Shown here: positions 1-34,721 of the stretch, one piece after another
Layout: the number at the start of each line of letters is the position of its first letter
How positions within the stretch are numbered: the first letter of the stretch is position 1
IMG/VR virus record: IMGVR_UViG_3300046171_000252
Coordinates: 1-64,000 of that record
Direction: 5' to 3' (one strand)
Length of the DNA: 64,000 bases
Notes under the pieces: generated by a model
Databases searched by the model: none
Told to the model about the DNA's origin: nothing
Seen by the model: only the letters and a program-made list of their open reading frames with translations
Made by a program: the position numbers and the translations under genes

Positions 1-2
1 CT

Positions 3-635
3 CTGAAGTCTCGTCGTCAGATGGCAGAGGGTTATATGTACAAACTCATTGAGATGAAAGAAAAGGTCCGTGAGTTTGACTTTAAGTGGGCAGATAAGGA
101 TAAAGCACAACCAATTTTTTGGGAAGAAGGTGGACCCGGTGGTGGTTCCAAGAAACTGTGTTGGTTTGATTTAGATGAACTTACACTGTCTCATTATCTG
201 AAGTCTTCTGAACTTGAGATTCGTGATCGTCTTCACCAGATGCAACATCTAGATAAGATTCTTGATAAATTGATGGAAAAGAATGATGGCAAACCAGTCA
301 CCCGAGAACAATTCCTTGATGCTGATGGGCAGTATTGGGAAAGAAGATTTGCCGATCAGGCTATGGATGAAATGATCGCGGCACAAACTGGCATCTCTAT
401 TGGTAACCTACACAGTATGCGTCGTGCTTCTGCACCTGCAATTGTTGATAAGAGAAATGAACTGCCAGAAGGTTATATGCCTCTGAATAAGATTCTTGAA
501 AGTCCTCAAGGTAAGATGGACTTCCTGAATGATCTGCAGAAGAAAGTTCTCACAGGTATCCAAGAAGTTACTGGTGAAAATCTTGGTATGATTGCCGGTT
601 CTCCAGAAGAGGAGCAAAAGAAACTCCAAGGTTGA
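3..635 (+). CDS. Hypothetical protein, probably 5'-truncated by the window edge; upstream-most gene of the Kelch/modification locus in this window
   Basis: Frame is open from position 3 (LKSRRQ) into ATG 21 and stops at TGA 633-635; next gene starts at 637. Confidence 0.75.
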   Translation: MKSRRQMAEGYMYKLIEMKEKVREFDFKWADKDKAQPIFWEEGGPGGGSKKLCWFDLDELTLSHYLKSSELEIRDRLHQMQHLDKILDKLMEKNDGKPVTREQFLDADGQYWERRFADQAMDEMIAAQTGISIGNLHSMRRASAPAIVDKRNELPEGYMPLNKILESPQGKMDFLNDLQKKVLTGIQEVTGENLGMIAGSPEEEQKKLQG

Positions 636-636
636 T

Positions 637-1170
637 ATGAACCAGAAGATTATTGTTGCCGATGACTTTTATGATATCGCACATCCATATCATAAAGGCA
701 TCGTAGAAGGTGAACCAATTTTTACTGATGAAGCACCCCAGAAAATTTCACATCTTCTGGGTCGTGAGATAAAAGTAGAGAACTTATTTAATGAAGTTGC
801 TCCATCCAAGACTCCAAATCCAATCACTGCTAATCTTGCCTGTGATTGGATTGCGGTTATCTATCTGACGATGCCTGGTGATTGTGTATCACAAAGAGGC
901 ATGAGTTTTTATAGTCATTTAAGTACAGGATTTGATGCATTCCCTGATGAGTATGCCCGTCAGTTACATGGAATACAGACACAAGAAGACATTATGGCAA
1001 CATTTAATATTGATAATAGAGAAGAGTGGAAAGAATATTCTAATGTATATGTAAAATATAATCGTATTGTATTATTCGGTGCTGATTTATGGCATTCATA
1101 TGGTAAAGGTTTTGGTGAGCAACTAAATAACTCAATGATATACCAGAAGCTGTTAATACAAAATGCCTAG
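637..1170 (+). CDS. DUF6445-like 2OG-Fe(II) oxygenase-fold protein, HxD motif degenerate
   Basis: Paralog of 5899-6516 (IIVxDDFY, WxAVIY, KYNRxVLF, LWHS); ATG 637 follows the stop of ORF1; the HxD position reads TxN. Confidence 0.7.
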   Translation: MNQKIIVADDFYDIAHPYHKGIVEGEPIFTDEAPQKISHLLGREIKVENLFNEVAPSKTPNPITANLACDWIAVIYLTMPGDCVSQRGMSFYSHLSTGFDAFPDEYARQLHGIQTQEDIMATFNIDNREEWKEYSNVYVKYNRIVLFGADLWHSYGKGFGEQLNNSMIYQKLLIQNA

Positions 1171-4100
1171 AGGAATATTTAGATTAAAACAGGTATATGA
1201 AGAGCAGTTATCTGGTAACTGGTCTGAGAAAAAAGATGTCTGGAATACTCCGAGTCCTTTTAATGCCACACATCCTTTTGGTTACTTTGGTGGTGGTCGT
1301 GCTCCAAGTGTAGTATCAACAGTAGATCGTATTGATTATTCTAATGATACGGCAACGGCATCACTAAAAGGACCATTAAGTGCTGCTATAAGCATTACGG
1401 GAGCAACAGGTAATGCCAACTTCGGTTACCATGGTGGTGGTTATCCTGGTCCAGTAGTATCAACAGTAGATCGTATTGATTATACTAATGATACTGCAAC
1501 TGCATCAACAAAAGGACCATTAAGTGTTGCTAGATATGCTCCAGCAGCAACCGGCAATACTTCCTTTGGTTACTTTGGTGGTGGTTATGCTGGTGGTGGT
1601 GTGTCAACAGTAGACCGTGTAGATTATTCTAATGATACTGGAACAGCACCAGCAAAAGGTCCATTAAGTGTTATCAGACACTATCATGGAGCAACAGGTA
1701 ATGCAGACTTTGGTTACTTTGGTGGTGGTTCTGGACCAAAATCATCAGTAGACCGTATTGATTACTCTAATGACACTGCAACAGCATCACCAAAAGGGCC
1801 ATTAAGTCTTGCTAGAGGTGGTCCAGCAGCAACAGGAAATTCATCCTTTGGATACTTTGGTGGTGGTTATCCTGGTCCAAGATCAACAGTAGATCGTATT
1901 GATTATTCTAATGACACTGCCACAGCAGTAGCAAAAGGACCATTAAGTAGTGCTAGATATTCACAGGGAGCAACGGGTAGTGCTTCCTTTGGTTATTTTG
2001 GTGGTGGCGAACCTGGTCCAGCAGTATCAAATGTAGACCGCATTGATTACTCTAATGATACGGCAACAGCATCACCAAAAGGACCATTGAATGTTGCTAG
2101 ATTTATGGCTGCAGCAACAAGTTCTCAGGCTAATGGAATCACGGATGAAACATTATTCCCGGCACCAACAGTAAGAGAAAATGTAGCACCACAAGGAACT
2201 GACTTTGGTTACTTTGGTGGTGGTAGAACTCCTGGTACTGTATCGACAGTAAACCGTATTGATTACTCTAATGATACGGCAACGGCATCAACAAAAGGAC
2301 CATTAAGTAGTGCTAGATATGGTTTAGCAGCAACAGGTAATGCTCCATTTGGATACTTTGCTGCTGGTAATCCTTCAAGTGCAGTATCAACAGTAGATCG
2401 TATTGATTACTCTAATGACACCGCAACGGCATCAGTCAAAGGACCATTAAGTGCTGTTAGTCCTGGTAGTGCTGCTAGTTTAGGCAATTCTAATTTTGGT
2501 TATTTTGCTGCTCCTTCTGCTACATCAACAGTAGAACGTATAGATTATTCTGATGACACTGCCACGGCATTAGTCAGAGGACCATTAAGTGTTTCCAAAT
2601 ATTCTAGAGCAGGAACAGGTAATGCTAATTTTGGATATGTTGGCGGTGGTGGTCCTGCAACATCGATAGTAGACCGTATTGATTACTCTAACGATACTGC
2701 TACAGCATCACCAAAAGGTCCATTAAGTCTTGCTAGAATATCTTTGGCAGCAACAGGTAATGCTTCATTCGGATACTTTGGTGGTGCTTTCCCCGGTCCA
2801 CATTCAACAGTAGACCGTATTGATTATTCTAATGACACCGCAACGGCATCACCTAAAGGACCATTGAGTTCTGCTAGAGGTCAATTTGCAGCAACAGGTA
2901 ATGCTGACTTTGGTTACTTTGGTGCAGGTTATGATGATAATCCTAATCGTGTGTCAACTGTGGACCGTGTTGATTACTCCAATGATACAGCAACGGCAGT
3001 GGCAAAAGGACCATTAAGTCAGGTTGTGATGAATCATGGAGCATGTAGTTCCAGAGCAAATGCAATCCCACTCAAAGGAACTGGTAACTTAGAAGTTCCA
3101 GTCTTAATGGGTGCTTTTAATGTCATAACACCACAAGGAACTGATTTTGGATACTTTGGTGGTGGACTTGCTCCCAGTTCTAGCTCATCAGTAGACCGTA
3201 TTGATTACTCTAATGACACTGCAACGGCAGCAGAAAAAGGACCATTCAGTGTTACTAGATATGGTGCGGCAGCAACAGGAAACCAATCATTCGGTTACTT
3301 TGCTGGTGGTCATGGTCCATTATCATCAGTAGACCGTATTAATTACTCTAACGATACCGCAACGGCATTAGAAAGAGGACCATTAACTGCTGGTAAACGA
3401 TACTATGGAGCAACTGGTAATTCATCTTTTGGTTACTTTGGTGGTGGGTCTGGTTCTGGTGGTGTTATATCATCAGTAGACCGTATTGATTACTCTAATG
3501 ACACTGCGACAGCAGTAGCAAAAGGACCATTAAGTGCTGCTAAGTATGTCACAGGAGCAACAGGTAATGCCAACTTTGGATATATTGGTGGTGGATTTGA
3601 TAATCCTAATCTCTATTCAACAGTAGAACGCATTGATTACTCTAATGACACCGCAACAGCATCACCAAAAGGACCATTAAGTGTTGCTAGACGGAGACTA
3701 GCAGCAACAGGTAATGCAGACTTTGGTTACTTTGGTGGTGGTAATGATCCCGAGCAGTCAACAGTAGATCGTGTTGATTATTCTAACGATACCGCAACAG
3801 CACCAGCAAAAGGACCATTAAGTCTTGCTAGAGCATACTTAGCAGCAACCGGTAATGCTTCTTTTGGTTACTTTGGTGGTGGTGAATCAGCACCTGGTCC
3901 AGGTGCAAGATCAACAGTAGATCGTGTTGATTATTCTAGTGATACTGCAACAGCAGCAGCAAAAGGACCATTAAGTGTTACTAGAAGATATTTTAGAGCA
4001 ACAAGTTCCAGAGACAATGCAATCCCAACTCAAAATATTGTAAATTATGCGATAGGAACTCTAGCAACTCCTAACACCGGTTACTTTGCTGGAGGTATGG

Positions 4101-5869
4101 CTGGTCCAGTATCAACAGTAGATCGTATTGATTATTCTAATGACACTGCAACAGCAACAGTAAAAGGATCATTAAGTGTTACTAGACGTGGAGTGGCAGG
4201 GACAGGTAATGCTTCCTTTGGTTATTTTGGTTGTTCTTATCCTGCTATATCAACAGTAGATCGTATTGATTATTTGAATGATACTACAACAGCATCACCT
4301 AAAGGACCGTTAACTGTTGCTAGAGCTTCTGGGGGAGCAACAGGTAATGCTAACTTTGGTTATTTTGGTGGTGGCAGTCCTAGTCCTGCAACAGTAGACC
4401 GTATTGATTACTCTAATGATACTGCAACAGCAGTAGCAAAAGGACCATTAAGTGTTGGTAGAAGATTATTAGGAGCAACAGGCAATAGTTCTTTTGGTTA
4501 CTTTGGTGGTGGTGTTCCTAATACAACAATAGTAGATCGTATTGATTATTCTAATGATACGGCAACGGCATCACCAAAAGGAACATTAACTGCTGTTAAA
4601 AGAAGAATAGCAGCAACAGGTAATGCTGACTTTGGATACTTTGGTGGTGGTGGTCCTAGTGCAGTATCAACAGTAGATCGTATTGATTATTCTAATGATA
4701 CTGCGACAGCATCACCAAAAGGACCATTAAGTGCTGCTAAACAATACACGGCAGCAACAGGAAACTCTAACTTTGGTTACTTTGGTGGTGGTGATCCTGG
4801 TCCAATGTCAACAGTAGACCGTATTGATTACTCTAATGATACTGCAACAGCATCAGTCAAAGGACCATTGAGTGCTGCTAGAAAATACTTTGCAGCATCA
4901 AGTGCCAGAGCCAATGGATTTACTGTAGTCGGTCCAGCACTGGTTTCTAATGCTGCTGCAATGGCAGTGCCTAATGCAAGATCATTTGGTTACTTTGGTG
5001 GTGGTCTTCCCAGTCAACCTACATCAAAAGTAGAACGTATTGATTATTCTAATGATACTGCAACAGCATCAGTCAAAGGACCATTAACTGATGTTGGGTA
5101 TGGTTTAGCAGCAACAGGTAATAGTTTCTTCGGTTACTTTGCTGGTGGTCAAGCTCCTTCTCCTGGTCCAACATCAAAAGTAGACCGTCTTGATTATTCT
5201 AATGACACTGCAACAGCAGTAGCAAAAGGACCATTAAGTGCAGTTGTATATAAAAATCGTGCAACTGGTAATAGTTCTTTTGGATATAATGGTGGTGGCA
5301 GAAACCCTTCTTCTGTACTATCAACAGTAGACCGTATTGATTATTCTAATGATACTGCAACAGCAGCAGTCAAAGGACCATTAAGTGTTGCTAGATATAG
5401 TCACGCAGCAACAGGTAATAGTTCTTTTGGATATTTTGCTGCTGGTCGTACTCCTACTACAAAATCAACAGTAGATCGTATTGATTACTCTAATGATACT
5501 GGAACAACACCATCAAAAGGACCATTAAGTGTTGCTAGATTTAATTTAGCAGCAACCGGCAATGCTGACTTTGGATACTTTGGTGGTGGCAGTAATCCCG
5601 AGTATTCAACAGTAGACCGCATTGATTATTCTAATGACACGGCAACGGCAGCAGTCAAAGGACCATTGAGTGCCGCTAAAACTTACTTTTCAGCAACAGG
5701 CAATGCTTCCTTTGGATACTTTGGTGGTGGTACTCCTGGTTCAGTATCAACAGTACAACGTATTGATTACTCTAATGATACTGCAACGGCATCAGTAAGA
5801 GGACCATTAAGTTCTGTTACACAAAGACAAGCAGGAGTGTCAGCAGCAGCAAATGGACTTCCACAATAG
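1163..5869 (+). CDS. Giant Kelch-like repeat protein, 1568 aa, 30 blades in five predicted 6-bladed beta-propellers
   Basis: 30 copies of the ~45-aa unit GYFGGG..STVDRIDYSNDTATA.KGPL..AR...AATGN (Kelch pattern GG...R), in groups of six separated by four unique linkers. Confidence 0.85.
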   Translation: MPRGIFRLKQVYEEQLSGNWSEKKDVWNTPSPFNATHPFGYFGGGRAPSVVSTVDRIDYSNDTATASLKGPLSAAISITGATGNANFGYHGGGYPGPVVSTVDRIDYTNDTATASTKGPLSVARYAPAATGNTSFGYFGGGYAGGGVSTVDRVDYSNDTGTAPAKGPLSVIRHYHGATGNADFGYFGGGSGPKSSVDRIDYSNDTATASPKGPLSLARGGPAATGNSSFGYFGGGYPGPRSTVDRIDYSNDTATAVAKGPLSSARYSQGATGSASFGYFGGGEPGPAVSNVDRIDYSNDTATASPKGPLNVARFMAAATSSQANGITDETLFPAPTVRENVAPQGTDFGYFGGGRTPGTVSTVNRIDYSNDTATASTKGPLSSARYGLAATGNAPFGYFAAGNPSSAVSTVDRIDYSNDTATASVKGPLSAVSPGSAASLGNSNFGYFAAPSATSTVERIDYSDDTATALVRGPLSVSKYSRAGTGNANFGYVGGGGPATSIVDRIDYSNDTATASPKGPLSLARISLAATGNASFGYFGGAFPGPHSTVDRIDYSNDTATASPKGPLSSARGQFAATGNADFGYFGAGYDDNPNRVSTVDRVDYSNDTATAVAKGPLSQVVMNHGACSSRANAIPLKGTGNLEVPVLMGAFNVITPQGTDFGYFGGGLAPSSSSSVDRIDYSNDTATAAEKGPFSVTRYGAAATGNQSFGYFAGGHGPLSSVDRINYSNDTATALERGPLTAGKRYYGATGNSSFGYFGGGSGSGGVISSVDRIDYSNDTATAVAKGPLSAAKYVTGATGNANFGYIGGGFDNPNLYSTVERIDYSNDTATASPKGPLSVARRRLAATGNADFGYFGGGNDPEQSTVDRVDYSNDTATAPAKGPLSLARAYLAATGNASFGYFGGGESAPGPGARSTVDRVDYSSDTATAAAKGPLSVTRRYFRATSSRDNAIPTQNIVNYAIGTLATPNTGYFAGGMAGPVSTVDRIDYSNDTATATVKGSLSVTRRGVAGTGNASFGYFGCSYPAISTVDRIDYLNDTTTASPKGPLTVARASGGATGNANFGYFGGGSPSPATVDRIDYSNDTATAVAKGPLSVGRRLLGATGNSSFGYFGGGVPNTTIVDRIDYSNDTATASPKGTLTAVKRRIAATGNADFGYFGGGGPSAVSTVDRIDYSNDTATASPKGPLSAAKQYTAATGNSNFGYFGGGDPGPMSTVDRIDYSNDTATASVKGPLSAARKYFAASSARANGFTVVGPALVSNAAAMAVPNARSFGYFGGGLPSQPTSKVERIDYSNDTATASVKGPLTDVGYGLAATGNSFFGYFAGGQAPSPGPTSKVDRLDYSNDTATAVAKGPLSAVVYKNRATGNSSFGYNGGGRNPSSVLSTVDRIDYSNDTATAAVKGPLSVARYSHAATGNSSFGYFAAGRTPTTKSTVDRIDYSNDTGTTPSKGPLSVARFNLAATGNADFGYFGGGSNPEYSTVDRIDYSNDTATAAVKGPLSAAKTYFSATGNASFGYFGGGTPGSVSTVQRIDYSNDTATASVRGPLSSVTQRQAGVSAAANGLPQ

Positions 5870-5902
5870 TATGCTATAATAAACAAAAGATTGATTATAT
5901 GA
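5840..5902 (+). repeat. 63-bp exact direct repeat, copy 1 (Kelch 3' end, stop, TGnTATAAT, ATG of next gene)
   Basis: Identical to 12029-12091 by direct comparison. Confidence 0.9.
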
Positions 5903-6516
5903 GACAAAATATTATTGTTGTTGATGACTTTTATGATAATCCAGAAGAGGTCAGGAACTTTTCACTGAACGCAGAGTTTCCTGATCCTGGTGATGACTAT
6001 ACATATCCTGGAAAAAACTCAGAAGGTTCATATTATTCTGAAGAAATTCATAAAAAATTTGAGGATCTTGCCAAAGAACCACTCATTCCTGCAGATAAGA
6101 ATGGATACTTTCGTCTTTCATTAGAAAAAGATAAGTATAGACAAGACGTTCATGTAGATCCATCATGGGAATGGGGTGCCGTAATTTATATGTCCGACCC
6201 AAAGGATTGTGTTGATGAGGGTGGCACATCATTTTGGAGACATAATACTCTGAAGTATGAGAACATTCCCAAGACAGATTTTGAAGCACAGCATCACGGA
6301 TGGCCAACATACAAAGAGTGTTGGTGGACGATGGTCTATGGTGATGGACTAGATAGAGATAAATGGACACGATACTTTCTGTGTCCGATGAAGTATAATC
6401 GTTTAGTATTATTCAGAACTCATCTGTGGCACTCGCATAATTATAATTTTGGTGATACACTAGAGAATGGTCGTATGGTCCAGTTGTTCTTTTTTAATCC
6501 GGTGAAGGAGTGGTGA
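5899..6516 (+). CDS. DUF6445-like 2OG-Fe(II) oxygenase
   Basis: HVD iron-binding motif, GGTSFW, YNRLVLF..HLWHS distal His. Confidence 0.75.
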   Translation: MRQNIIVVDDFYDNPEEVRNFSLNAEFPDPGDDYTYPGKNSEGSYYSEEIHKKFEDLAKEPLIPADKNGYFRLSLEKDKYRQDVHVDPSWEWGAVIYMSDPKDCVDEGGTSFWRHNTLKYENIPKTDFEAQHHGWPTYKECWWTMVYGDGLDRDKWTRYFLCPMKYNRLVLFRTHLWHSHNYNFGDTLENGRMVQLFFFNPVKEW

Positions 6517-7349
6517 ATGAAAACATATCATTTTATGGCAGGTCTTCCACGATCCGGAAGCACCTTATTGAAGAGTTTGATTGATCAGAATCCAAATATT
6601 CATACTGAACCTGTGAGTTCTGTAATGGAATTGATGTATCATACGGAAGAATACTTTAAGCAATCAGAACAGTATCAGGGATATCAAAAACCACAGAATG
6701 CTCATAAGATTATCAGTAGTTTTATAGAGAATCAATATTATGAAAGAGAAGAAGAGATAATCATTGACCACTGCCGTGCCTGGCCAAATAATATAGAACG
6801 ATTAAAGACTTACATTACACCTAATCCAAAAATCATATGCCCTGTTCGTAATATCACAGAAGTATTGACTTCATTTATTACAATGATACATCGCAACTCC
6901 GATGAATTTAATTTTATTGATAAGGCACTGATTGATGGTGGGTTCAGTGTGGATGATGATAATCGTTGTCAGTATTTGATGGGTGATGAGGGTATTGTAG
7001 AGCAGGCACTATGGGCACAGTCTCAGGCATTCATCGGCACGATGATAAGTATTTGTTGATGGTTGAGTATGATGATCTAGTCAATACTCCAGAAGAAACG
7101 ATGAGAAGAATTTATAATTTCTTGGAGGTTGATTACTATCATCATGATTTTAATAATGTGCAGAATAATCATAGAGAAAGTGAAGACCAGTGGAACCTAA
7201 AGGATATGCATTATGTCCGTGATAAGGTCAAGAAAATATCAAAGAAACCCGAAGATGTTTTATCTCCTTTTATTCTAAATAGGTATAAGAAACTGGAATA
7301 CTGGAAGTATCCGGACAGCCCTTATTTGGTAAAAAATGGCAGTAACTAA
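6517..7349 (+). CDS. PAPS-dependent sulfotransferase, split by a -1 frameshift near 7035 (ORFs 6517-7059 and 7011-7349)
   Basis: N-terminal GLPRSGSTLL 5'-PSB loop, CPVRNITEVLTS 3'-PB motif, C-terminal VEYDDLV..PEETMRRIYNFL; the span of 833 nt is one base short of a whole-codon length. Confidence 0.85.
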
Positions 7350-10300
7350 TAGAAGAGGAATATTTTCATTACTTGATGTAAGAGAAAGACAGGGTGCCGG
7401 AGTTTGGTCCACGAAAGAAGATGTCTGGAATACTCCGAGTCCTTTTTTGGTGCCACAAGGATTTGCTACTGGATATTTTGCTGGCGGGGCATATACAATT
7501 TCAACAGTAGATCGTATTGATTACTCTAATGACACTGCAACGGCATCGGTAAAAGGACCATTAAGTGTTGGTAGAAATTCTCTAGGAGCAACAGGTAATA
7601 AGGACTTTGGTTACGTTGGTGGTGGTGCGAGTCCTTCTGTAGTATCAACAGTAGACCGCATTGATTATTCTAGTGATACTGGAACAACACCAGCAAAAGG
7701 ACCACTTAGTGATGTTAGAAGACGTCAAGCAGCAACAGGTAATGCTTCCTTCGGTTACTTTGGTGGTGGTACTCCATCATCACAGGTTAGATTAACAACA
7801 GTAGACCGCATTGATTACTCTAATGATACTGCAACGGCATCACCAAAAGGACCATTAAGTTCTGCTAGATCATACCATGCGGCAACAGGTAATTCTTCCT
7901 TTGGATACTTTGCTGGTGGTTCCACTCCAAGTAAAGTAACAACAGTAGACCGTATTGATTATTCTAATGACACGGCAACAGCATCAGTCAAAGGACCATT
8001 AAGTCTTGCTAGAGATACTTCGGGAGCAACAGGTAATGCTGATTTTGGTTACTTTGGTGCTGGTTATGGATCTAGCATATTTTCAACAGTAGATCGTATT
8101 GATTATTCTAATGATACTGCGACAGCAGCAGCAAAAGGACCATTGAGTGCTGTTAAAGCAGCTTTAGGAGCAACTGGTAATAGTTCCTTTGGATACTTTG
8201 GTGGTGGTTATCCTGGTCCTGCATATTCAACAGTAGACCGTATTGATTACTCTAATGACACCGCAACGGCAGTCAGTCAAAGGACCATTAAGTCTTGCTA
8301 GATCATTCATGAAAGCATTAAGTTCCAGAGCTAATGCAATTCCCGCAAAATTATTACAACCGGCACCAACAGTAAGAACGGGTGAGATAGCACCACAAGG
8401 AACTGACTTTGGTTACTTTGGTGGAGGTTATGATGGTTCTACTACCGTATCAACAGTAGACCGTATTGATTATTCTAATGACACTGCAACGACAGTGGCA
8501 AAAGGACCATTAAGTGTTGCTAAAAATGGTATGGGAGCAACAGGTAATGCTCCCTTTGGATATTTTGGTGGTGGTAGTCCTGGACCATTATCATCAGTAG
8601 ACCGTATTGATTACTCTAATGACACTCCAACGGCATCAGCAAAAGGACCATTGAGTGTTGCTAGATATTATTTGGCAGCAACAGGTAATAGTGATTTTGG
8701 TTATTTTGCTGGTGGTGATACGATTATTTCAACAGTAGATCGTGTTGATTATAATAATGACACTGCAACAGCAGCAGTAAAAGGACCATTGAGTACTGCT
8801 AGAGATGAATTAGCAGCAACAGGTAATACTTCTTTCGGTTACTTTGGTGGAGGTGCAACACCTACTGTAGTATCATCAATAGATCGCATTAATTATGCTA
8901 ATGATACTGCTACTGCATCACCAAAAGGACTATTGAGTCAAGGTAGAAAAGATTTAGCAGCAACAGGTAATGCTTCTTTTGGATACTTTGGTGGTGGAGC
9001 TTCTCCTAGTAATGTATCAACAGTAGATCGTATTGATTACTCTAATGATACTGCTACGGCATCACCTAAAGGATCATTGAGTACTGCTAAGTTTTTTCTA
9101 AGTGCAACAGGTGATCAGAACTTTGGTTATTTTGGTGGTGGTCTTAATCCTGCTCTAAGTCCGGCTAGAAAAACAACAGTAGATCGTATTGATTACTCTA
9201 ATGATACTGTAACAGCATCACCTAAAGGTTCATTAAACACTGAAAAAACTGCTTTAGGAGCATCAAGTTCCAGAGCCAATGCAATACCACTCAAAGGACC
9301 TGGTAACTTAGAAGTTCCAGTCTTAATGGGTGCTTTTAGTCGTAATTTGGGACCACAAGGAACTGATTTTGGTTATGTTGGTGGTGGTTATCCCGCAAAA
9401 TCAACAATAGAACGTATTGATTACTCTAGCGATACTTCAACTGCATCAGTAAGAGGACCATTAAGTCTTGCTAGATATTCTTTAGGAGCAACAGGTAATA
9501 GTTCTTTTGGTTACTTTGGTGGTGGATATACTTCTAGTAATGTATCAACAGTAGACCGTATTGATTATTCTAATGACTCTGCAGATGCAGTAGCAAAAGG
9601 ACCATTGACTAGTGCTAAAAGATATATGGGAACAACAGGTACTCAAAGTTTTGGTTACTTTGGTGGTGGTTATGATAATTCTACTCCTGTATTATCAACA
9701 GTAGATCGTATTGATTATAATAATGATACCAATACGGCATCACCAAAAGGACCATTAAGTGTCGCCAGATATGAATTAGCAGCAACAGGTAATCAATCAT
9801 TCGGTTACTTTGCTGGTGGTGGTCCTGGTCCAAAATCAACAGTAGATCGTATTGATTATTCTAATGATACGGCAACGGCAGCAGTCAAAGGACCATTAAG
9901 TGCTGCTAGATGGGTTGTAAGTGCAACGGGAAATGCTTCATTCGGTTACTATGGGGGTGGGGGACAACCTGGTACAAGTTCGAAAGTAGATCGTATTGAT
10001 TACTCTAATGATACTGCAACTTCAATAGAGAAGGGTCCATTAAGTATTGCTAGGGAGAGTATGTCGGCAACAGGTAATCAATCATTTGGTTACTTTGCTG
10101 GAGGATATACTCCGACAATATCAACGATAGATCGTATTGATTATTCTAATGACACTGCCACGGCATCAGTAAGAGGTCCATTAACTGAGGTTAAGGGATA
10201 CACAGCAGCAACAAGTTCCAGAGCCAATGGAATTCCGACTGAAAATATTGTAAATTATGCGGCAGGAACTCTAGGGACTCCTAACACCGGTTACTTTGGT

Positions 10301-12058
10301 GGTGGTGCTTCTCTGAGTAGTATAGATCGTATTGATTATTCCAATGACACTGCAGCGGCAACAGTAAAAGGACCGATGAGTGTTGCTAGATATGGAGGAG
10401 CAGCAATAGGTAATGATTCGTTCGGTTACTTTGGTGGTGGTTCTCCTGGTCCAACATCATCAGTAGATCGTATTGATTACTTAAATGATACTGTAGATGC
10501 ATCACCCAAAGGACCATTGAGTGGCGCATTCCCTTATATCGCAGCAACAGGTAATCAATCGTTTGGATACGTTGGTGGTGGTTATCCTGCAAAATCAACA
10601 GTAGACCGCATTGATTATTCTAATGACACCGTAGCAGCACCAGCAAAAGGACCATTAAGTGTTGCTAGATTTGGTTTAGGAGCAACAGGTAATGCTTCCT
10701 TTGGTTATTTTGGTGGTGGTGGTCCTGGTGAAAAATCAACAGTAGACCGTATTGATTATTCTAATGACACCGCAACAGCATCAGCAAAAGGACCATTGAG
10801 TGCTGGTAGAAGATATTTTTCGGCAACTGGTAATGCTTCCTTTGGTTACTTTGGTGGTGGTGCAGGTGGTCAGACAATAGTAGACCGCATTGATTATTCT
10901 AATGACACCGCAACAGCAGTAGAAAAAATACAATTCAGTGGTGCCAGACAAGAACGAGGAGCAACGGGTAACTCTTCCTTCGGATATTTTGGTGGTGGTC
11001 ATCCTGGTCCAGCAGTATCAATAGTAGATCGTATTGATTATTCTAATGACACTGCAACGTTATCACCTAGAGGACCATTAAGTGTTGCTAGAAGATATTC
11101 TGCAGCAGCAAGTGCCAGAGCCAACGGATTCGTTCCAATCGGTCCAGCAGTGGTTTCTAATGCTGCTGCAATCGCAGGGTCATTTAATCCAACAACCTTT
11201 GGTTACTTTGGTGGTGGTAATACTGGATCTAATGCATCAACAGTAGATCGTATTGATTACTCTAATGATACTGCAACGGCATCAGTCAAAGGACCATTAA
11301 GTCTTGCTAGAAGATACCTAGCAGCAACAGGCAATAGTTTCTTCGGTTACTTTGGTGGTGGTGATCCTGCATTATCAACAGTAGACCGTATTGATTATTC
11401 TAATGACACTGCTACAGCAGCAGCAAAAGGACCATTGAGTAATGGTAGACATTCTTTGGCAGCAACGGGCAATGCTAACTTTGGTTACTTTGGTGGTGGT
11501 TGGGCTCCCAATTCGAGCTCATCAGTAGATCGTATTGATTATTCTAATGACACTCCAACAGCATCAGCAAAAGGACCATTAAGTGCTGCTAGAGATGGTT
11601 TAATAGCAACAGGAAACTTATCATTTGGTTACTTTGGTGGTGGTAGTCCTGGAGTATCAACAGTAGATCGTATTGATTATTCTAATGATACTGCAACGGC
11701 ATCACCAAAAGGACCATTAAGTTTTGGCAGAGATCAATTGGGAGCAACAGGTAATGCAGACTTTGGATATTTTGGTGCTGGTCATCCTGCAAAATCAACA
11801 GTAGATCGTATTGATTATTCTAATGATACTGCAACGGCATCAGTCAAAGGACCATTAAGTGTTGGTAGGCATGCTTTGGCAGCAACAGGTAATTCATCTT
11901 TTGGTTACTTTGGTGGTGGTACTCCTGGTCCAAAATCAACAGTAGATCGTATTGATTACTCAAATGATACTGCTACGGCAGCAGCAAAAGGACCATTAAG
12001 TGTTGCTAGATATGGTTTGGGAGCAACTTCAGCAGCAGCAAATGGACTTCCACAATAG
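7336..12058 (+). CDS. Second giant Kelch-like repeat protein (~1573 aa, 30 blades), split by a +1 frameshift near 8272 (ORFs 7336-8301 and 8243-12058)
   Basis: Same N-terminus (RGIF.L..V.E.Q..G.WS.K.DVWNTPSPF), 5x6 blades, same four linkers and same AAANGLPQ end as 1163-5869; acggcagtcagtcaaagga has one extra base versus the repeat consensus. Confidence 0.85.
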
Positions 12059-12091
12059 TATGCTATAATAAACAAAAGATTGATTATATGA
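12029..12091 (+). repeat. 63-bp exact direct repeat, copy 2
   Basis: Identical to 5840-5902. Confidence 0.9.
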
Positions 12092-12750
12092 TTGATAATC
12101 CACTGACACATATTTTGATCCGACCCAATGTAATTTCTCCTGAAGGTATTCGGGAGATGGTGGATCATATTAAACAATCACCTTGTGAAGACCTATCTGT
12201 ATTTGATTCGGAGACGACAAATAGAACAGGTGAGACATCATGGCAGGTTGATAAGAAGACAAGAGACACACAAATTGTTCCTATGGGAGATTTGTATCCC
12301 AAGATTACGGAACTTCTTCATCATGCCGTAAAAGAAGTTATCAATCCTTTCTATGGTATTGATGTAACCAGTAGTGAAGTCCCACAGGTTCTATCCTATG
12401 GTATTGGTGGACACTACAAACCTCATATTGATGGTGAGAGTATCTGGGTCACACCAAGAGGTGAAAAGATTTGGAAAAAATCTACGGACAGAGATATCTC
12501 TATGGTCTTTTATCTCAATGATGATTTTGAGGGTGGAGATTTTATTTTTCCAGAACATCACATTCGTGTAAGACCTGAACCTGGTATGATGGTTTGCTTC
12601 CCTTCCAGTCATTATTATATGCACGGAGTAGAACCAGTGACAAGAGGGAAAAGATATAGTATAGTGTGTTGGGCTACGGTAAAAGGTCAACCAAGTATGG
12701 ACGAAATTAATAATCAGTTATCTCAAGAGTATGGAGTCAAAGTAATTTAA
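12088..12750 (+). CDS. 2OG-Fe(II) oxygenase, prolyl 4-hydroxylase (P4Hc)-like
   Basis: YKPHID (HxD), FYLNDDFEGG, FPS..MHGVEPVTRGKRYS. Confidence 0.85.
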   Translation: MIDNPLTHILIRPNVISPEGIREMVDHIKQSPCEDLSVFDSETTNRTGETSWQVDKKTRDTQIVPMGDLYPKITELLHHAVKEVINPFYGIDVTSSEVPQVLSYGIGGHYKPHIDGESIWVTPRGEKIWKKSTDRDISMVFYLNDDFEGGDFIFPEHHIRVRPEPGMMVCFPSSHYYMHGVEPVTRGKRYSIVCWATVKGQPSMDEINNQLSQEYGVKVI

Positions 12751-12753
12751 ATT

Positions 12754-14163
12754 ATGGCAAACATTTTGGGATTGCAGTTCGGACATGATGGATCCGTTTG
12801 CCTTGTTAAGAATGGTAAGTTAGAGTTTGCCATTGGAACAGAAAGAATTACTGGTGTTAAAAAGCAACAAGGATTTACAGACGAGGTTATAAATTATGCT
12901 TTGGACTCTTGTGGTTTAACAGTTGATGATATTGATTGTGTTGCCACCAATGATTTTAAGCAAGAATTTTTTGGTAATGAATATCTTGTAGATAATTTTA
13001 TTATTCAGGGTAGAGAGATTAAGTGTTATATTATTTCTCACCATCTAGCACACTGTGCCTCTGCATATTATACTAGTCCATTTAATGAAGCACATTGTTT
13101 CAGTATGGATTGTAGTATGGGAAAGATAGAAGCAAACTCTGTGGTGGCATATGGTAAAGGGAAGAAACTTTTTGCCGAATATTGTCCCGGAGAAATGGTC
13201 GGAGTATTATATGGTGAAGTAACAGAGAAGTTAGGACTCGGACCTGCACTTCATAAGGCAGGAACAACAATGGGTCTCTCATCATATGGGACACCATTTG
13301 ATTTTGATTATCAATCTTATACTGATGACATCAAACATAAGATGGATGTGGCAGCATCCGTTCAGAATTTGTTTGAGAATAAAGTATTGAGTGTCTTGAA
13401 TGATATAGATCAGAACTCTGATAATCTTTGTCTCTCCGGAGGATCATTTTTAAATTGTAATGCTAACTCAGAGGTCGTAAGAAAATCTAAATTTAAACAG
13501 TTTCATCACTTTCCGGCATGTGGTGATGATGGAACGGCAGTTGGTTCTGCACTTTATGTTGCTCATCATATTCTTGGAGAGGCAAGGTATGATTATGAAC
13601 CACAAGACATCTGTTATACCGGAAGAGATTATCCAAGTCAGACACCGGACTATAATCACATAGCAAGACAAATTGCCGATGGTAAAATAATTGGTTGGTT
13701 TCAGGGCAAATCAGAGTTTGGTCCAAGAGCACTAGGTAATCGTTCTATTCTTGCAGACCCAAGAAACTTTCATAATCGTGAACTCATCAATCATGTCGTG
13801 AAGAATAGAGAATGGTTCCGTCCTTTTGCTCCTGTTGTATTAGAAGAGTGCTATCAAGATTGGTTTGACTTTCCTATCCCCAGTCCCTACATGCTTTATA
13901 CCGCACAGGTGAAGCAACCAGAAAAAGTTCCAGCCATAACTCATGTTGATGGGTCTGCCAGATTTCAGACAGTCACAGAGAAATCTAATAAGCACTACTA
14001 TAATATTATTAAAGCATTTGGAGAACTAACTGGTGTGCCTGTTCTACTGAATACAAGTTTAAATGGAAACGGACAACCCATATTAGAAACCGAAGAGGAC
14101 GCACAAGAGTTTTACAAAAATTCTAAACTTGATATGATGATTATCAATGGTGCTATAATATAA
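12754..14163 (+). CDS. O-carbamoyltransferase, NodU/CmcH/TobZ family
   Basis: GHDGS, SHHLAHCASAY, LSGGSFLNC, EFGPRALGNRSILADP, FRPFAP, THVDGSARFQTV, LLNTSLN. Confidence 0.93.
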   Translation: MANILGLQFGHDGSVCLVKNGKLEFAIGTERITGVKKQQGFTDEVINYALDSCGLTVDDIDCVATNDFKQEFFGNEYLVDNFIIQGREIKCYIISHHLAHCASAYYTSPFNEAHCFSMDCSMGKIEANSVVAYGKGKKLFAEYCPGEMVGVLYGEVTEKLGLGPALHKAGTTMGLSSYGTPFDFDYQSYTDDIKHKMDVAASVQNLFENKVLSVLNDIDQNSDNLCLSGGSFLNCNANSEVVRKSKFKQFHHFPACGDDGTAVGSALYVAHHILGEARYDYEPQDICYTGRDYPSQTPDYNHIARQIADGKIIGWFQGKSEFGPRALGNRSILADPRNFHNRELINHVVKNREWFRPFAPVVLEECYQDWFDFPIPSPYMLYTAQVKQPEKVPAITHVDGSARFQTVTEKSNKHYYNIIKAFGELTGVPVLLNTSLNGNGQPILETEEDAQEFYKNSKLDMMIINGAII

Positions 14164-14166
14164 ATA
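14159..14166 (+). promoter_or_regulatory. T4-type late promoter TATAAATA
   Basis: Exact consensus 22 nt upstream of ATG 14189. Confidence 0.6.
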
Positions 14167-14188
14167 TTTGAAAGTTATCTCACAAAAA

Positions 14189-14578
14189 ATGGCAAAATAT
14201 CTAAAGCATTATTGGAAGAAAAATGGTTCTTGGTTAACCGATCCCGGTACATATGTAGAACAACATCACCCAGAAGCAGACTATCCTGGTCTTGGAGTAA
14301 AGGTCTGGATGCACGACTCTGATGGTGTTGATGTCTGCCTTTCTGAAGTTCCTGATAGCACTACGATTTCTACTATTAATGTAGGTTCTAAGAAAGCTGT
14401 TATGGAACTGACCGAAACGCAATTTAATTCTGTCAAAACTCCTCTTGATGAAGAATCAGTTCTTCGCCAAGCAGCAATGGAGGCAGAAATGAGTGGTGAT
14501 ACTGACACCGCAGCAACTAAGAATACTGCTGCAGCTGCCAAAGCAACCGAAGCACAGAATGCACTGAATGCACTCTGA
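14189..14578 (+). CDS. Hypothetical protein, last gene of the Kelch locus
   Basis: ORF track entry; ATG 14189 preferred over TTG 14168. Confidence 0.75.
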   Translation: MAKYLKHYWKKNGSWLTDPGTYVEQHHPEADYPGLGVKVWMHDSDGVDVCLSEVPDSTTISTINVGSKKAVMELTETQFNSVKTPLDEESVLRQAAMEAEMSGDTDTAATKNTAAAAKATEAQNALNAL

Positions 14579-14756: not shown

Positions 14757-14993
14757 ATGAATTTCACGGTATTTTCTAAAAACAATTGCCCATACTGCGA
14801 GAAAATTAAAAAAGTTTTAGAGTTGACAAAAAGTGAGTTTGTGGTCTATACTCTAGGAGAAGATTTTGATCGGGAATCATTTTTTGATAAGTTTGAAGAA
14901 AACTCTACCTTTCCACAGGTTTTATGTGATGATAAAAAATTAGGAGGTTGTGTTGACACCATTAAATTCCTCCGAGAAAACAACGTCATCTGA
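14757..14993 (+). CDS. nrdC: Glutaredoxin (NrdC-like)
   Basis: CPYC active site, TFPQV, IGG-like LGGC. Confidence 0.9.
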   Translation: MNFTVFSKNNCPYCEKIKKVLELTKSEFVVYTLGEDFDRESFFDKFEENSTFPQVLCDDKKLGGCVDTIKFLRENNVI

Positions 14994-15099: not shown

Positions 15100-15327
15100 A
15101 TGTTAGCAGTAAGTTTAGTCTTTGGTTCATTTCTGACCGTTTTGTTTCTAATACTAGGACTCGTAATTGGTTGGACTGCTAGAGAATATATGATGAACTA
15201 TCGGGAAGTACCCAGACCTCACCCCGAAATGTTTGATGAACAGGGCAACCTGATTCCAGATGAGGTCATAGCATTTAATTTTGAAAACTATCATGACGAC
15301 AGCGAAGAAGATGACAACAACGACTAA
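15100..15327 (+). CDS. Conserved cyanophage hypothetical membrane protein
   Basis: GAGGT SD before ATG 15100; N-terminal hydrophobic helix; HPEMFDEQGN motif. Confidence 0.65.
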   Translation: MLAVSLVFGSFLTVLFLILGLVIGWTAREYMMNYREVPRPHPEMFDEQGNLIPDEVIAFNFENYHDDSEEDDNND

Positions 15328-17026: not shown

Positions 17027-17187
17027 TGAAAACTAAGCAATTGATTAAAGACCTTAGAAGTGCAATTTCTCAAGATTATTTGTATAATAGTGATGAGCTT
17101 AAATACATGCAAGAGCAACTTGACCAACTGGAACTATCAGTAAAAAGAATTCCAAGAACAAAACCCAAAGGATTTGGTGAAAAATGA
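17026..17187 (+). CDS. Small hypothetical protein, 53 aa (ends KGFGEK)
   Basis: Manually translated; overlaps both neighbours by ATGA-type coupling. Confidence 0.65.
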   Translation: MKTKQLIKDLRSAISQDYLYNSDELKYMQEQLDQLELSVKRIPRTKPKGFGEK

Positions 17188-34709: not shown

Positions 34710-34721
34710 ATATAAAACATT

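What the first reader, a model, noticed from the sequence alone, without database searches (positions are those of the whole stretch)
637..14578. Candidate hydroxylate-then-decorate modification system built around the Kelch giants
Seen: a tightly coupled run of oxygenase-fold, Kelch, oxygenase, sulfotransferase, Kelch, P4H-like oxygenase, O-carbamoyltransferase and a late-promoter small ORF. Known: 2OG-Fe(II) enzymes create hydroxyls; PAPS sulfotransferases and NodU/TobZ enzymes transfer sulfate or carbamoyl groups onto hydroxyls. Inference: a self-contained pathway that modifies the Ser/Thr/Pro/Asp-rich Kelch proteins or a virion glycan to alter host binding or evade defence. Alternative: nucleobase modification, since phage carbamoyltransferases acting on 5-hydroxymethylcytosine are known. 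No hydroxymethylase is visible in this window.
Basis: partly seen in the sequence, partly recalled or inferred. Interest (0 to 1): 0.85.

Follow-up and report, generated by a model that had tools for sequence, protein, structure and literature searches.

The report
Phage Kelch-propeller giants with decorating enzymes
A marine T4-like phage places three giant proteins, each a string of five Kelch propellers, among oxygenases, glycosyltransferases, a sulfotransferase and a carbamoyltransferase just after its tail-fibre genes; the gene set is conserved across many related phages and probably decorates the phage's own fibre-like proteins, a chemistry not yet shown for any phage.

Summary
The gene run is real. 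Enzyme genes and Kelch genes alternate on one strand, with overlaps or gaps of at most 29 nt. AlphaFold2 and Foldseek show a six-bladed Kelch propeller, and each giant holds 30 blades of 47 aa.

- The first "oxygenase" (637-1170) lacks the iron and 2OG ligands.
- The sulfotransferase and the second giant are each split by a single-base indel. Relatives 96-98% identical over these stretches are intact.
- The module continues upstream across the circular contig's junction. There it holds a third giant, a GT-A and a GT4 glycosyltransferase, and the tail-fibre genes.

Nearly all of 49 IMG/VR loci found through the Kelch protein carry the enzymes. All loci whose sulfotransferase is at least 48% identical carry Kelch repeats. 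More distant sulfotransferases sit beside collagen-like or chaperone-bearing tail fibres. The carbamoyltransferase is only loosely linked.

Best reading: a late-expressed system that hydroxylates, glycosylates and then sulfates or carbamoylates fibre-like virion proteins. Substrates and chemistry are inferred, not shown. Closest precedents are Iyer et al.'s predicted hydroxylase-sulfotransferase operons, mimivirus collagen modification and mycobacteriophage virion glycosylation. It is a new variant of a known kind.

The parts
21..635 (+). C-terminal 204-aa domain, fold unknown, of a 584-aa GT4 glycosyltransferase fusion. Its N-terminal GT4 part lies before window position 1, at the contig end (L011:15443-17197).
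   Evidence: 100% identical to L011:16583-17194. The full protein matches Glycos_transf_1 at 1.6e-17. The domain is conserved next to Kelch genes down to S-SKS1. It has no PDB match by sequence profile. 800-aa relatives add an FkbM methyltransferase domain.
637..1170 (+). oxyA: a degenerate DUF6445 paralogue, probably non-catalytic. It overlaps the start of giant 1.
   Evidence: DUF6445 at 23.8 bits, cut-off 24. About 30% identical to oxyB. All 11 aligned members have I-T-A-N in place of H-V-D-P and S in place of the Arg.
1163..5869 (+). Kelch giant 1 (1568 aa): a conserved N-terminal stretch of about 35 aa, then five six-bladed Kelch propellers (30 blades, 47-aa period).
   Evidence: Repeat map. 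AF2 model of aa 1-345 and Foldseek search. phrog_19111 at 5e-282.
5899..6516 (+). oxyB: DUF6445 protein with a 2OG/Fe(II)-oxygenase fold and an intact H-x-D...H...R set.
   Evidence: Pfam DUF6445 at 4.5e-12. Motifs in the alignment. AF2 pLDDT 93.9. The Foldseek matches listed are almost all named 2OG oxygenases: HygX, OGFOD1, PtlH, proline hydroxylase.
6517..7059 (+). Sulfotransferase, N-terminal piece, with the 5'-PSB loop GLPRSGST. Cut off by a frameshift near 7033-7036.
   Evidence: Sulfotransfer_3 at 3.2e-10. 98% identical relatives encode one intact 277-aa protein, e.g. L005:7258-8091. Relatives have one base more here.
7011..7349 (+). Sulfotransferase, C-terminal piece, in another frame.
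   Evidence: Sulfotransfer_3 at 8.3e-7, profile positions 180-214. Contiguous with the N piece in L002, L003 and L005.
7336..8301 (+). Kelch giant 2, N-terminal piece (6 blades). Cut off by a frameshift near 8272.
   Evidence: 68% identical to giant 1. The intact orthologue L014:4393-9135 has 1580 aa. The window has one extra base relative to orthologues and to its own paralogous repeats.
8243..12058 (+). Kelch giant 2, C-terminal piece (24 blades).
   Evidence: 65% identical to giant 1 over 1282 aa. 24 repeats.
12088..12750 (+). P4H-type 2OG/Fe(II) oxygenase.
   Evidence: 2OG-FeII_Oxy_3 at 1.4e-18. H113-x-D115...H179...R189 are invariant in 11 relatives. Best PDB sequence matches are prolyl 3- and 4-hydroxylases and PiuC.
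12754..14163 (+). NodU/TobZ-type O-carbamoyltransferase, an accessory member of the module.
   Evidence: Carbam_trans_C at 1e-65 and Carbam_trans_N at 2e-37. PDB matches: NovN, GdmN, TobZ at 1e-53 to 1e-62. Present in only part of the Kelch loci.
14159..14166 (+). T4-type late-promoter motif TATAAATA, upstream of the small ORF.
   Evidence: Present upstream of the small ORF in 15 of 17 relatives examined.
14189..14578 (+). Conserved 129-aa protein of unknown function with an Ala/Glu/Lys-rich tail. The last gene of the module.
   Evidence: Conserved at 39-98% identity after the P4H or carbamoyltransferase gene. Relatives align from the ATG at 14189, not the TTG at 14168. No Pfam, PHROG or NCBIfam match.

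Best explanation
This is a late-expressed module that builds and decorates fibre-like virion appendages.

The phage encodes three proteins of about 1,570-1,590 aa. Two are in the window and one lies just before it on the circular contig. Each has a conserved N-terminal stretch of about 35 aa followed by five six-bladed Kelch propellers. Between orthologues the blade scaffold barely changes, while the B-C and D-A loops vary strongly. That pattern fits a ligand-binding protein.

The interleaved genes encode enzymes that act in the infected cell's cytoplasm:
- Two 2OG/Fe(II) oxygenases (the P4H type and DUF6445 oxyB) create hydroxyls. Candidate sites are Pro in K-G-P or in the x-P-G loops, or Asn/Asp in the S-N-D-T loop.
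- A GT-A and a GT4 glycosyltransferase attach sugars.
- The PAPS sulfotransferase, the O-carbamoyltransferase and, in some relatives, an FkbM methyltransferase cap sugar or amino-acid hydroxyls.
- oxyA is a catalytically dead paralogue, perhaps a substrate-binding helper.

Shown: gene content, folds, catalytic motifs, tight coupling and conserved synteny.
Inferred: that the giants are the substrate, that they sit in the virion, the order of reactions and the modified residues.
For: Gene order and coupling.

Kelch fold and modular blade counts: 6, 12, 18, 24, 30 or 36 in most ORFs.

The module directly follows tail-fibre genes, both here (L011) and in S-SKS1.

Synteny in both directions:
- Nearly all of 49 loci found through the Kelch protein carry the GT4 C-terminal (o21) domain, oxyA, oxyB, the sulfotransferase, the P4H and the small ORF.
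- In the sulfotransferase-based set, Kelch loci also carry the GT4 and GT-A genes where the flanks allow.
- Of the 80 best sulfotransferase loci, all with at least 48% identity carry Kelch repeats.
- The 40-47% group often sits beside collagen-repeat giants plus GT2/methyltransferase and Glf genes, or beside fibres with the Peptidase_S74 chaperone domain.

Catalytic motifs are intact in oxyB, the P4H and the sulfotransferase family.

The GT-A profile matches STIV A197 at 4e-8. GT4 scores 64 bits in Pfam.

Orthologue substitutions concentrate in the propeller loops.

The Kelch family is essentially confined to phages: 6 MAG contigs among 185,579 species genomes.

Precedents:
- A Kelch protein was found by mass spectrometry in phage CBB virions (PMC5259590).
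- Dioxygenase plus sulfotransferase operons were predicted to modify co-encoded collagen-like or tail-collar proteins (PMC2938197).
- Mimivirus L230 is described as a collagen-modifying lysyl hydroxylase (PMC5802723, PMC9546862; I know it from elsewhere as a hydroxylase/glucosyltransferase).
- Mycobacteriophage virions are glycosylated (Freeman 2023, cited in PMC12801897).
Against: There is no biochemical or proteomic evidence for any modification, or for the giants being in the virion.

Candidate target residues are not universal:
- The Tyr of D-Y-S-N is Phe in S-SKS1 and L003.
- The K-G-P proline is not conserved in distant clades that keep the P4H.

S-SKS1 keeps the Kelch, sulfotransferase and P4H genes but shows no GT4 or GT-A nearby.

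Some sulfotransferase loci (for example L106, L108, L110) have no obvious repetitive giant within the flanks.

Tail-fibre regions are hypervariable islands where unrelated genes collect.

In this very contig the sulfotransferase and giant 2 are frameshifted.

The standing hypothesis for cyanophage 2OG oxygenases is metabolic, through control of 2OG and NtcA (PMC3037559).
Confidence: 0.55

Rival explanations
1. The enzymes build or remodel a separate glycan or small molecule, such as host envelope polysaccharide, LPS or a metabolite. The Kelch giants are lectin-like virion or intracellular proteins that bind that product, not the substrate.
For: All named relatives of the carbamoyltransferase and several fold relatives of oxyB act on sugars or natural products: TobZ, NovN, GdmN; HygX, EvdO1, SnoK/SnoN. 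Larger cyanophages carry LPS-type gene clusters (PMC3037559). The carbamoyltransferase occurs in many phages without giants. Kelch loops vary like binding sites.
Against: The enzyme genes alternate one by one with the giants inside the tail-fibre operon. They follow the giants through lineages only 25-40% identical. In other phages the same sulfotransferase family is again next to fibre proteins. Among the genes examined I saw none for lipid-carrier, flippase, polymerase or sugar-nucleotide synthesis in the module.
Confidence: 0.2
2. The genes lie together without a shared function. The tail-fibre region is a hypervariable island that collects auxiliary genes, and the oxygenases serve metabolism, for example control of 2-oxoglutarate.
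For: Published view of cyanophage 2OG oxygenases (PMC3037559). Accessory content varies: the carbamoyltransferase, the DUF6445 pair and the FkbM domain come and go.
Against: A core set (Kelch, the GT4 C-terminal (o21) domain, sulfotransferase, P4H) holds its order and tight spacing from this phage to S-SKS1. A catalytically dead oxygenase paralogue stays conserved directly upstream of one giant class, which is hard to explain by 2OG consumption. The family is absent from cellular genomes.
Confidence: 0.15
3. DNA hypermodification: an oxygenase hydroxylates a base, and the glycosyl-, carbamoyl- and sulfo-transferases then decorate it, as with base J or the TET-linked phage pathways.
For: Phage glycosyltransferases are reported to hypermodify DNA (Pyle 2024, cited in PMC12619734). 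From my own knowledge, 2OG dioxygenases do so as well, and the enzyme classes needed overlap with those found here.
Against: The oxygenases match prolyl-hydroxylase/PiuC and DUF6445 families, not Tet/JBP. No DNA cytosine methyltransferase or hydroxymethylase was seen in the stretches examined, only ThyX. The genes sit among late structural genes, not with replication or nucleotide genes. The association with Kelch, collagen and fibre genes would have no explanation.
Confidence: 0.07

Closest known systems
Predicted bacterial hydroxylase plus sulfotransferase operons with co-encoded collagen-like or phage tail-collar proteins (Iyer, Abhiman, de Souza and Aravind 2010, PMC2938197)
   Same: 2OG dioxygenases and a P-loop sulfotransferase lie next to a repetitive structural protein taken as the substrate. 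The logic proposed is to hydroxylate first and then sulfate. The same paper notes FIH-type hydroxylases fused to Kelch repeats or to sulfotransferases in protists.
   Different: Those operons are bacterial. They use beta-hydroxylase, PhyH and JmjC families and often a PAPS synthetase. Here the system is phage-borne, the proposed substrate is a tandem Kelch-propeller giant, the oxygenases are P4H-type and DUF6445, and glycosyltransferases and a carbamoyltransferase are added. Both cases are predictions without biochemistry.
Mimivirus collagen modification (L230 lysyl hydroxylase/glucosyltransferase and a further glucosyltransferase; PMC5802723, PMC9546862, review PMC9614988)
   Same: A virus encodes both a repetitive structural protein and the 2OG hydroxylase and glycosyltransferase that modify it, without relying on host machinery.
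   Different: The virus infects a eukaryote. The substrate is collagen, the target is hydroxylysine, and no sulfation or carbamoylation is involved. The enzyme families are unrelated to DUF6445, GT4 and the A197-like GT-A.
Mycobacteriophage virion glycosylation (Freeman et al. 2023, PMC10527164, cited in PMC12801897); STIV A197 GT-A glycosyltransferase (PDB 2c0n)
   Same: Glycosyltransferases encoded by a phage or archaeal virus act on the virus's own structural proteins. The 217-aa GT-A found here matches A197 by profile.
   Different: Those systems glycosylate capsid or tail-tube proteins. They have no oxygenase, sulfotransferase or carbamoyltransferase and no Kelch giants.
Kelch-domain virion proteins of jumbo phages (CBB_552; 'virion structural protein' entries of PhiPA3, Noxifer and Phabio)
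   Same: The same six-bladed Kelch fold. CBB_552 was found in virions by mass spectrometry (PMC5259590).
   Different: Those are much smaller proteins (about 250-700 aa) that match over about one propeller. They lack the 47-aa near-identical blades, and no associated modifying enzymes have been reported.
Protein-tyrosine sulfotransferases TPST1/2
   Same: They are the best solved-structure matches to the sulfotransferase profile (1.5e-8 for TPST1). They share the 5'-PSB loop (GxPRSGxTL) and a conserved Arg/Ser pair spaced as I recall the TPST2 3'-PB pair to be.
   Different: The catalytic Glu of TPST aligns with a non-acidic position. The one conserved Tyr of the blades is Phe in lineages that keep the enzyme. 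The match may only reflect that TPSTs are among the few Sulfotransfer_3 members with solved structures.

Membership tests
Kelch-repeat beta-propeller | Sequence match to the Pfam Kelch models above the gathering score | tested here: not met
   Only Kelch_3 at 17.4 bits (cut-off 22) in the 321-aa piece. Nothing for the 1568-aa and 1271-aa ORFs.
Kelch-repeat beta-propeller | Blades of 44-56 aa, each a four-stranded sheet, closing into a six-bladed propeller, with a GG doublet and conserved aromatic and Arg positions | tested here: met
   47-aa period with FGYFGGG...VDRIDY...AR. The AF2 model shows six four-stranded blades at pLDDT 87. Foldseek gives KLHL12, KLHL3, KEAP1 and SAKe6 at E about 1e-17 to 1e-18, TM 0.86-0.92 by target, rmsd about 2 A. 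Blade counts are multiples of six in most ORFs.
2OG/Fe(II) oxygenase, prolyl-hydroxylase type (2OG-FeII_Oxy_3) | Pfam score above cut-off, plus the H-x-D...H iron triad and the 2OG-binding Arg | tested here: met
   68.1 bits against a cut-off of 27. H113, D115, H179 and R189 are invariant.
2OG/Fe(II) oxygenase, prolyl-hydroxylase type (2OG-FeII_Oxy_3) | Hydroxylates peptidyl proline | not testable with these tools
   The best PDB relatives include P3H1, bacterial P4H and PiuC/YbiX. Substrate cannot be read from sequence.
DUF6445 (2OG-oxygenase fold) | Pfam score above cut-off, double-stranded beta-helix fold, intact metal and 2OG ligands | tested here: met
   For oxyB (5899-6516): 46.8 bits against 24; H-V-D, a distal H and R are present; AF2 pLDDT 93.9, and the Foldseek matches listed are almost all named 2OG oxygenases at TM about 0.5-0.58. 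hhalign against the P4H family found nothing, so the link rests on fold and motifs.
DUF6445 (2OG-oxygenase fold) | The same features in oxyA (637-1170) | tested here: not met
   23.8 bits against 24. The H and D ligands and the Arg are replaced in all 11 aligned members. It is a homologue but unlikely to be an active oxygenase.
PAPS-dependent sulfotransferase (Sulfotransfer_3) | 5'-PSB and 3'-PB motifs, with Pfam score above cut-off | tested here: met
   41.1 and 29.9 bits against a cut-off of 27 for the two pieces. GLPRSGST and R111...S119 are invariant in the family.
PAPS-dependent sulfotransferase (Sulfotransfer_3) | One intact reading frame in this window | tested here: not met
   Two frames, with the shift near 7033-7036. 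Relatives 96-98% identical over this stretch are intact.
Protein-tyrosine sulfotransferase (TPST/RaxST) | A catalytic Glu base, and a conserved, exposed acceptor Tyr with acidic neighbours in the proposed substrate | tested here: not met
   The Glu position aligns with Pro or Val. The D-Y Tyr is Phe in S-SKS1 and L003. It corresponds to the structural Tyr of the Kelch motif (my inference from the topology).
NodU/TobZ O-carbamoyltransferase | A Kae1-like N domain plus a YrdC-like C domain | tested here: met
   Carbam_trans_N at 129.8 bits and Carbam_trans_C at 220.9 bits. TobZ, GdmN and NovN at 1e-53 to 1e-62. It is not a NodU equivalog: 171 bits against a cut-off of 1000.
Viral GT-A glycosyltransferase (STIV A197-like) | DxD motif and a profile match to a solved GT-A | tested here: met
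   L011:14787-15440 has an invariant D-S-D. Its profile matches 2c0n (A197) at 4.1e-8.
Hydroxylate-then-sulfate operons of Iyer et al. 2010 | Dioxygenase, sulfotransferase and a repetitive structural protein in one conserved neighbourhood | tested here: met
Hydroxylate-then-sulfate operons of Iyer et al. 2010 | Sulfate actually placed on an enzymatically made hydroxyl of the co-encoded protein | not testable with these tools
   This needs mass spectrometry or labelling.

The most novel reading that the evidence does not exclude
A phage-encoded pathway of several enzymes installs sulfated and carbamoylated groups at a repeated site in each of about 90 near-identical Kelch blades per phage (three giants of 30 blades each). 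The groups sit either on glycans or directly on hydroxylated residues. The result is polyanionic, glycocalyx-like appendages with hypervariable binding loops. This would be the first sulfated or carbamoylated virion protein known in any phage. It would also give a structural, non-metabolic role to part of the long-puzzling expansion of 2OG oxygenases in cyanophages.
Probability: 0.35. Interest if true: 0.85.

Novelty: new variant of a known kind. Interest (0 to 1): 0.62.

Why it matters
Marine T4-like cyanophages carry many 2OG/Fe(II) oxygenases and carbamoyltransferases whose roles are unknown. The usual guess is metabolic.

This module ties a defined subset of them, plus a sulfotransferase and two glycosyltransferases, to a class of giant Kelch-propeller proteins placed after the tail-fibre genes. 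It points to enzymatic decoration of virion appendages.

If true, it adds sulfation, carbamoylation and hydroxylation to the short list of known phage virion modifications. It would bear on host recognition and on adsorption to particles or mucus in the sea. It would also offer a natural scaffold of 30 near-identical blades with variable loops.

The hypothesis can be tested directly, because a cultured carrier exists: S-SKS1 on Synechococcus WH7803.

Tried and rejected
- Near-identity DNA search of the region against GenBank phages found no match.
- Tyr sulfation of the D-Y-S-N-D motif looked attractive, because Asp sits at -1 and TPSTs are the best PDB matches. I rejected it as the main idea. 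The Tyr is Phe in S-SKS1 and L003, which keep the enzyme. The TPST catalytic Glu is not aligned.
- K-G-P as a universal P4H target was rejected, because the Pro is not conserved in distant clades. Pro in the B-C loop is widespread (60-94% of blades), but x-P-G occurs in only 0-35%.
- hhalign of DUF6445 against the P4H family gave no signal. The DUF6445 profile found nothing in PDB sequences. The fold had to be tested by AF2 and Foldseek instead.
- The GT4 C-terminal domain found nothing in PDB by profile. Neither it (as window ORF 21-635) nor the small ORF gave a credible Pfam or PHROG match, and the small ORF and the full-length GT4 fusion gave nothing for it in NCBIfam.
- The N-terminal motif of the giants was searched in all other window ORFs, to find a shared attachment module. 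It occurs only in the giants.
- Programmed frameshifting as the cause of the two split genes was considered and judged unlikely. Each split is a private single-base indel relative to 96-98% identical relatives. A tail-fibre gene on the same contig also looks split. Assembly error or very recent mutation is more likely.
- A scan of bacterial and archaeal genomes for a host or cellular origin gave only 6 MAG contigs from unrelated phyla. That says nothing about the host.

Full report
**What is there.** The window is the first 64 kb of a 207,616-bp IMG/VR contig. It belongs to a divergent T4-like myovirus. It encodes homologues of gp5, gp27, baseplate and tail-fibre proteins, gp32, gp59 and gp53, plus PhoH and ThyX. 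talC lies just upstream on the contig. The region has no near-identical DNA in GenBank phages. By a tail protein, the closest relatives are the single-cell viral contig AG-345-L05 (43%; NCBI files it under Kyanoviridae) and Synechococcus phage S-SKS1 (38%). The host is not established.

**Gene run.** The ORFs of the finding lie on one strand and are tightly packed:
- oxyA, 637-1170
- Kelch giant 1, 1163-5869
- oxyB, 5899-6516
- sulfotransferase, 6517-7349
- Kelch giant 2, 7336-12058
- P4H-type oxygenase, 12088-12750
- carbamoyltransferase, 12754-14163
- small ORF, 14189-14578

Junctions are overlaps of 8 and 14 nt or gaps of 0-29 nt.

**The giants.** Pfam gives only a sub-threshold Kelch_3 hit. 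PHROGs places them in phrog_19111, of unknown function.
- Giant 1 has 30 copies of a 47-aa unit (FGYFGGG-x6-8-S-T-V-D-R-I-D-Y-S-N-D-T-A-T-A-x-x-K-G-P-L-S-x-A-R-x3-A-A-T-G-N). They form five groups of six, separated by linkers of about 25 aa.
- The two pieces of giant 2 have 6 and 24 copies.
- Across relatives the number of units per ORF is in most cases 6, 12, 18, 24, 30 or 36.
- An AF2 model of residues 1-345 (pLDDT 87, pTM 0.83) shows a short N-terminal helix and six four-stranded blades.
- Foldseek against the PDB returns KLHL12, KLHL3, KEAP1 and designed SAKe6 Kelch propellers at E about 1e-17 to 1e-18, TM 0.86-0.92 by target, rmsd about 2 A.

So "Kelch giants" is correct: each is five tandem six-bladed Kelch propellers. 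The N-terminal 35 aa (R-G-I-F-x-L...W-S-x-K-x-D-V-W) occur only in these proteins. They come in three classes per genome.

Between orthologues 81% identical, substitutions pile up in three places. These are the loop after G-G-G, the two residues before K-G-P and the loop after L-S (23-63% mismatch). The scaffold changes by 0-16%. By Kelch topology (my inference), the first and third are the B-C and D-A loops of the usual ligand-binding face.

**The enzymes.**
- The P4H-type protein scores 68 bits on 2OG-FeII_Oxy_3 and keeps H-x-D...H...R. Its best PDB relatives are prolyl 3- and 4-hydroxylases and PiuC.
- oxyB is a DUF6445 protein (46.8 bits) with H-V-D, a distal His and an Arg. Its AF2 model (pLDDT 93.9) matches almost only named 2OG/Fe(II) oxygenases: HygX, OGFOD1, PtlH, proline hydroxylase, SnoK/SnoN, at TM about 0.5-0.58.
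- oxyA is a 30%-identical paralogue. The His and Asp ligands and the Arg are replaced in every member examined. It is conserved but probably not catalytic.
- The sulfotransferase has the PAPS-binding loops. Its profile finds TPST1 and TPST2 first among solved structures (1.5e-8 and 7e-6), but the TPST catalytic Glu is not aligned.
- The carbamoyltransferase has both NodU/TobZ domains.

**Two split genes.** The sulfotransferase changes frame near 7033-7036 and giant 2 near 8272. Relatives 96-98% identical over these stretches have one base more in the first case. In the second case they, and the window's own paralogous repeats, have one base fewer. Those relatives encode intact proteins of 277 and 1580 aa. 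A tail-fibre gene on the same contig also looks split. Assembly indels or very recent mutations are the likely cause. I did not read any protein through a stop.

**The module is larger than the finding.**
- The contig's end repeats the window's start, so the contig is circular or terminally redundant.
- ORF 21-635 is the C-terminal 204 aa of a 584-aa protein. Its N-terminal part is a GT4 glycosyltransferase (Glycos_transf_1, 1.6e-17).
- Upstream of that lie a 217-aa protein, a third Kelch giant and tail-fibre genes. The 217-aa protein has an invariant D-S-D, and its profile matches the GT-A glycosyltransferase A197 of STIV (4e-8). The third giant has 1589 aa and 30 blades.
- Some relatives fuse an FkbM methyltransferase domain to the GT4 protein.
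- The 3' end of each giant plus the 29-nt spacer after it is identical in front of the GT-A, oxyB and P4H genes.

**Synteny.**
- tblastn finds the same set next to Kelch-repeat genes in S-SKS1, AG-345-L05 and AG-345-O18. In S-SKS1 the cluster also follows the baseplate and tail-fibre genes across the record junction.
- A scan with the Kelch protein gave 49 IMG/VR loci. Almost all with enough flank carry the GT4 C-terminal domain, oxyA, oxyB, the sulfotransferase, the P4H and the small ORF. The window-type carbamoyltransferase is seen only in the closer relatives; a few others carry a 32%-identical one.
- The reverse scan with the sulfotransferase gave at least 584 loci. Among the best 80, every locus with at least 48% identity has Kelch repeats. 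Where the flanks allow, it also has GT4, GT-A and P4H genes.
- About 33 loci at 40-47% identity lack Kelch repeats. In several of them the sulfotransferase sits beside collagen-repeat giants with GT2/methyltransferase and Glf genes (L098). In others it sits beside long repetitive fibres ending in the Peptidase_S74 chaperone domain. Others have no obvious giant within the flank.
- The carbamoyltransferase family is in 146 phage records, against 4 with giants.
- The Kelch family was found in only 6 MAG contigs among 185,579 species genomes.

**Interpretation.** Three observations argue for a functional unit: strict alternation of enzyme and Kelch genes inside the tail-fibre operon, conservation of that order down to 25-40% identity, and the link of the same sulfotransferase family to other fibre proteins. 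The giants are the most likely substrate. The two conserved glycosyltransferases and the occasional FkbM domain suggest that at least part of the decoration is a glycan, which the sulfotransferase and carbamoyltransferase then cap. The oxygenases may create attachment sites or oxidise the sugar. None of this chemistry is shown.

Tests of specific sites were negative or weak:
- The blade Tyr is Phe in lineages that keep the sulfotransferase.
- The K-G-P Pro is not universal.
- Pro occurs in 60-94% of B-C loops, but x-P-G in at most 35%.
- S-N-[DE]-T is the most widely conserved exposed-looking motif, and it is also an N-x-T sequon. That may simply be structural.

**Known precedents.**
- Iyer et al. 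2010 predicted bacterial operons in which dioxygenases and sulfotransferases modify co-encoded collagen-like or tail-collar proteins, hydroxylating first and sulfating second (PMC2938197).
- Mimivirus collagen is modified by the virus's own enzymes, the lysyl hydroxylase L230 and a glucosyltransferase (PMC5802723, PMC9546862).
- Mycobacteriophages glycosylate their virions (Freeman 2023, cited in PMC12801897).
- A Kelch protein is a virion component of phage CBB (PMC5259590).
- For cyanophage 2OG oxygenases the published idea is metabolic (PMC3037559).
- My literature searches found no paper describing this module or a phage sulfotransferase linked to fibres.

**Verdict.** It is a new variant of a predicted kind of system, with no experimental evidence yet.

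Noticed in passing
window 1-815 and L011:16583-17375 (contig end): The contig's last ~800 bases repeat the window's first ~800. The assembly is therefore circular or terminally redundant. The window starts in the middle of a GT4 glycosyltransferase gene.
   Followed up: yes
window 7033-7036 and about 8272; L011:3656-3735: Single-base indels split the sulfotransferase and Kelch giant 2. A tail-fibre gene at the contig end is also in two overlapping frames, with contiguous profile coverage. The baseplate-hub pair 32239-33594 / 33530-34756 may be a further case. This points to indel errors in the assembly.
   Followed up: partly
window 5850-5898, 12039-12087; L011:14738-14786: The 3' end of each giant plus the 29-nt spacer after it is identical in all three copies. 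It precedes oxyB, the P4H and the GT-A gene, which points to gene conversion among the giants. The spacer contains TATAAT and ATAATAAAC, which may act as a promoter.
   Followed up: no
L098:347-12743; L094, L103, L120, L127, L131: In other IMG/VR phages a 40-47% identical sulfotransferase lies beside collagen-repeat proteins of up to 2,228 aa. These come with GT2/methyltransferase and UDP-galactopyranose mutase genes. In others it lies beside long repetitive fibres with a C-terminal Peptidase_S74 chaperone domain.
   Followed up: partly
L007, L008, L020 (800-aa proteins); P0060, P0080, P0084: Some relatives fuse an FkbM-family methyltransferase domain (PF05050) to the N-terminus of the GT4 protein.
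   Followed up: no
window 14757-14993, 15281-15904, 17184-17819, 18095-18850: Directly after the module come a glutaredoxin, a DUF6433 protein, ThyX and PhoH, then gp59 and gp32. The module therefore lies between the tail-fibre genes and a block of redox, nucleotide-metabolism and replication genes.
   Followed up: no
L018:37-7461; L027 and L036: The module has variant layouts. L018 goes from giant 1 straight to the P4H, with no oxyB, sulfotransferase or giant 2 cassette. L027, L036 and L002 place a second-type sulfotransferase (44%) and a second-type carbamoyltransferase (32%) after the P4H and the small ORF.
   Followed up: partly
L134 (MAG Hyphomicrobiaceae contig, 121,774 bp) and five other MAG contigs: Kelch-giant relatives appear in MAGs of unrelated phyla (Paceibacterota, Polynucleobacter, Verrucomicrobiota). 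These are probably phage contigs binned by mistake.
   Followed up: no
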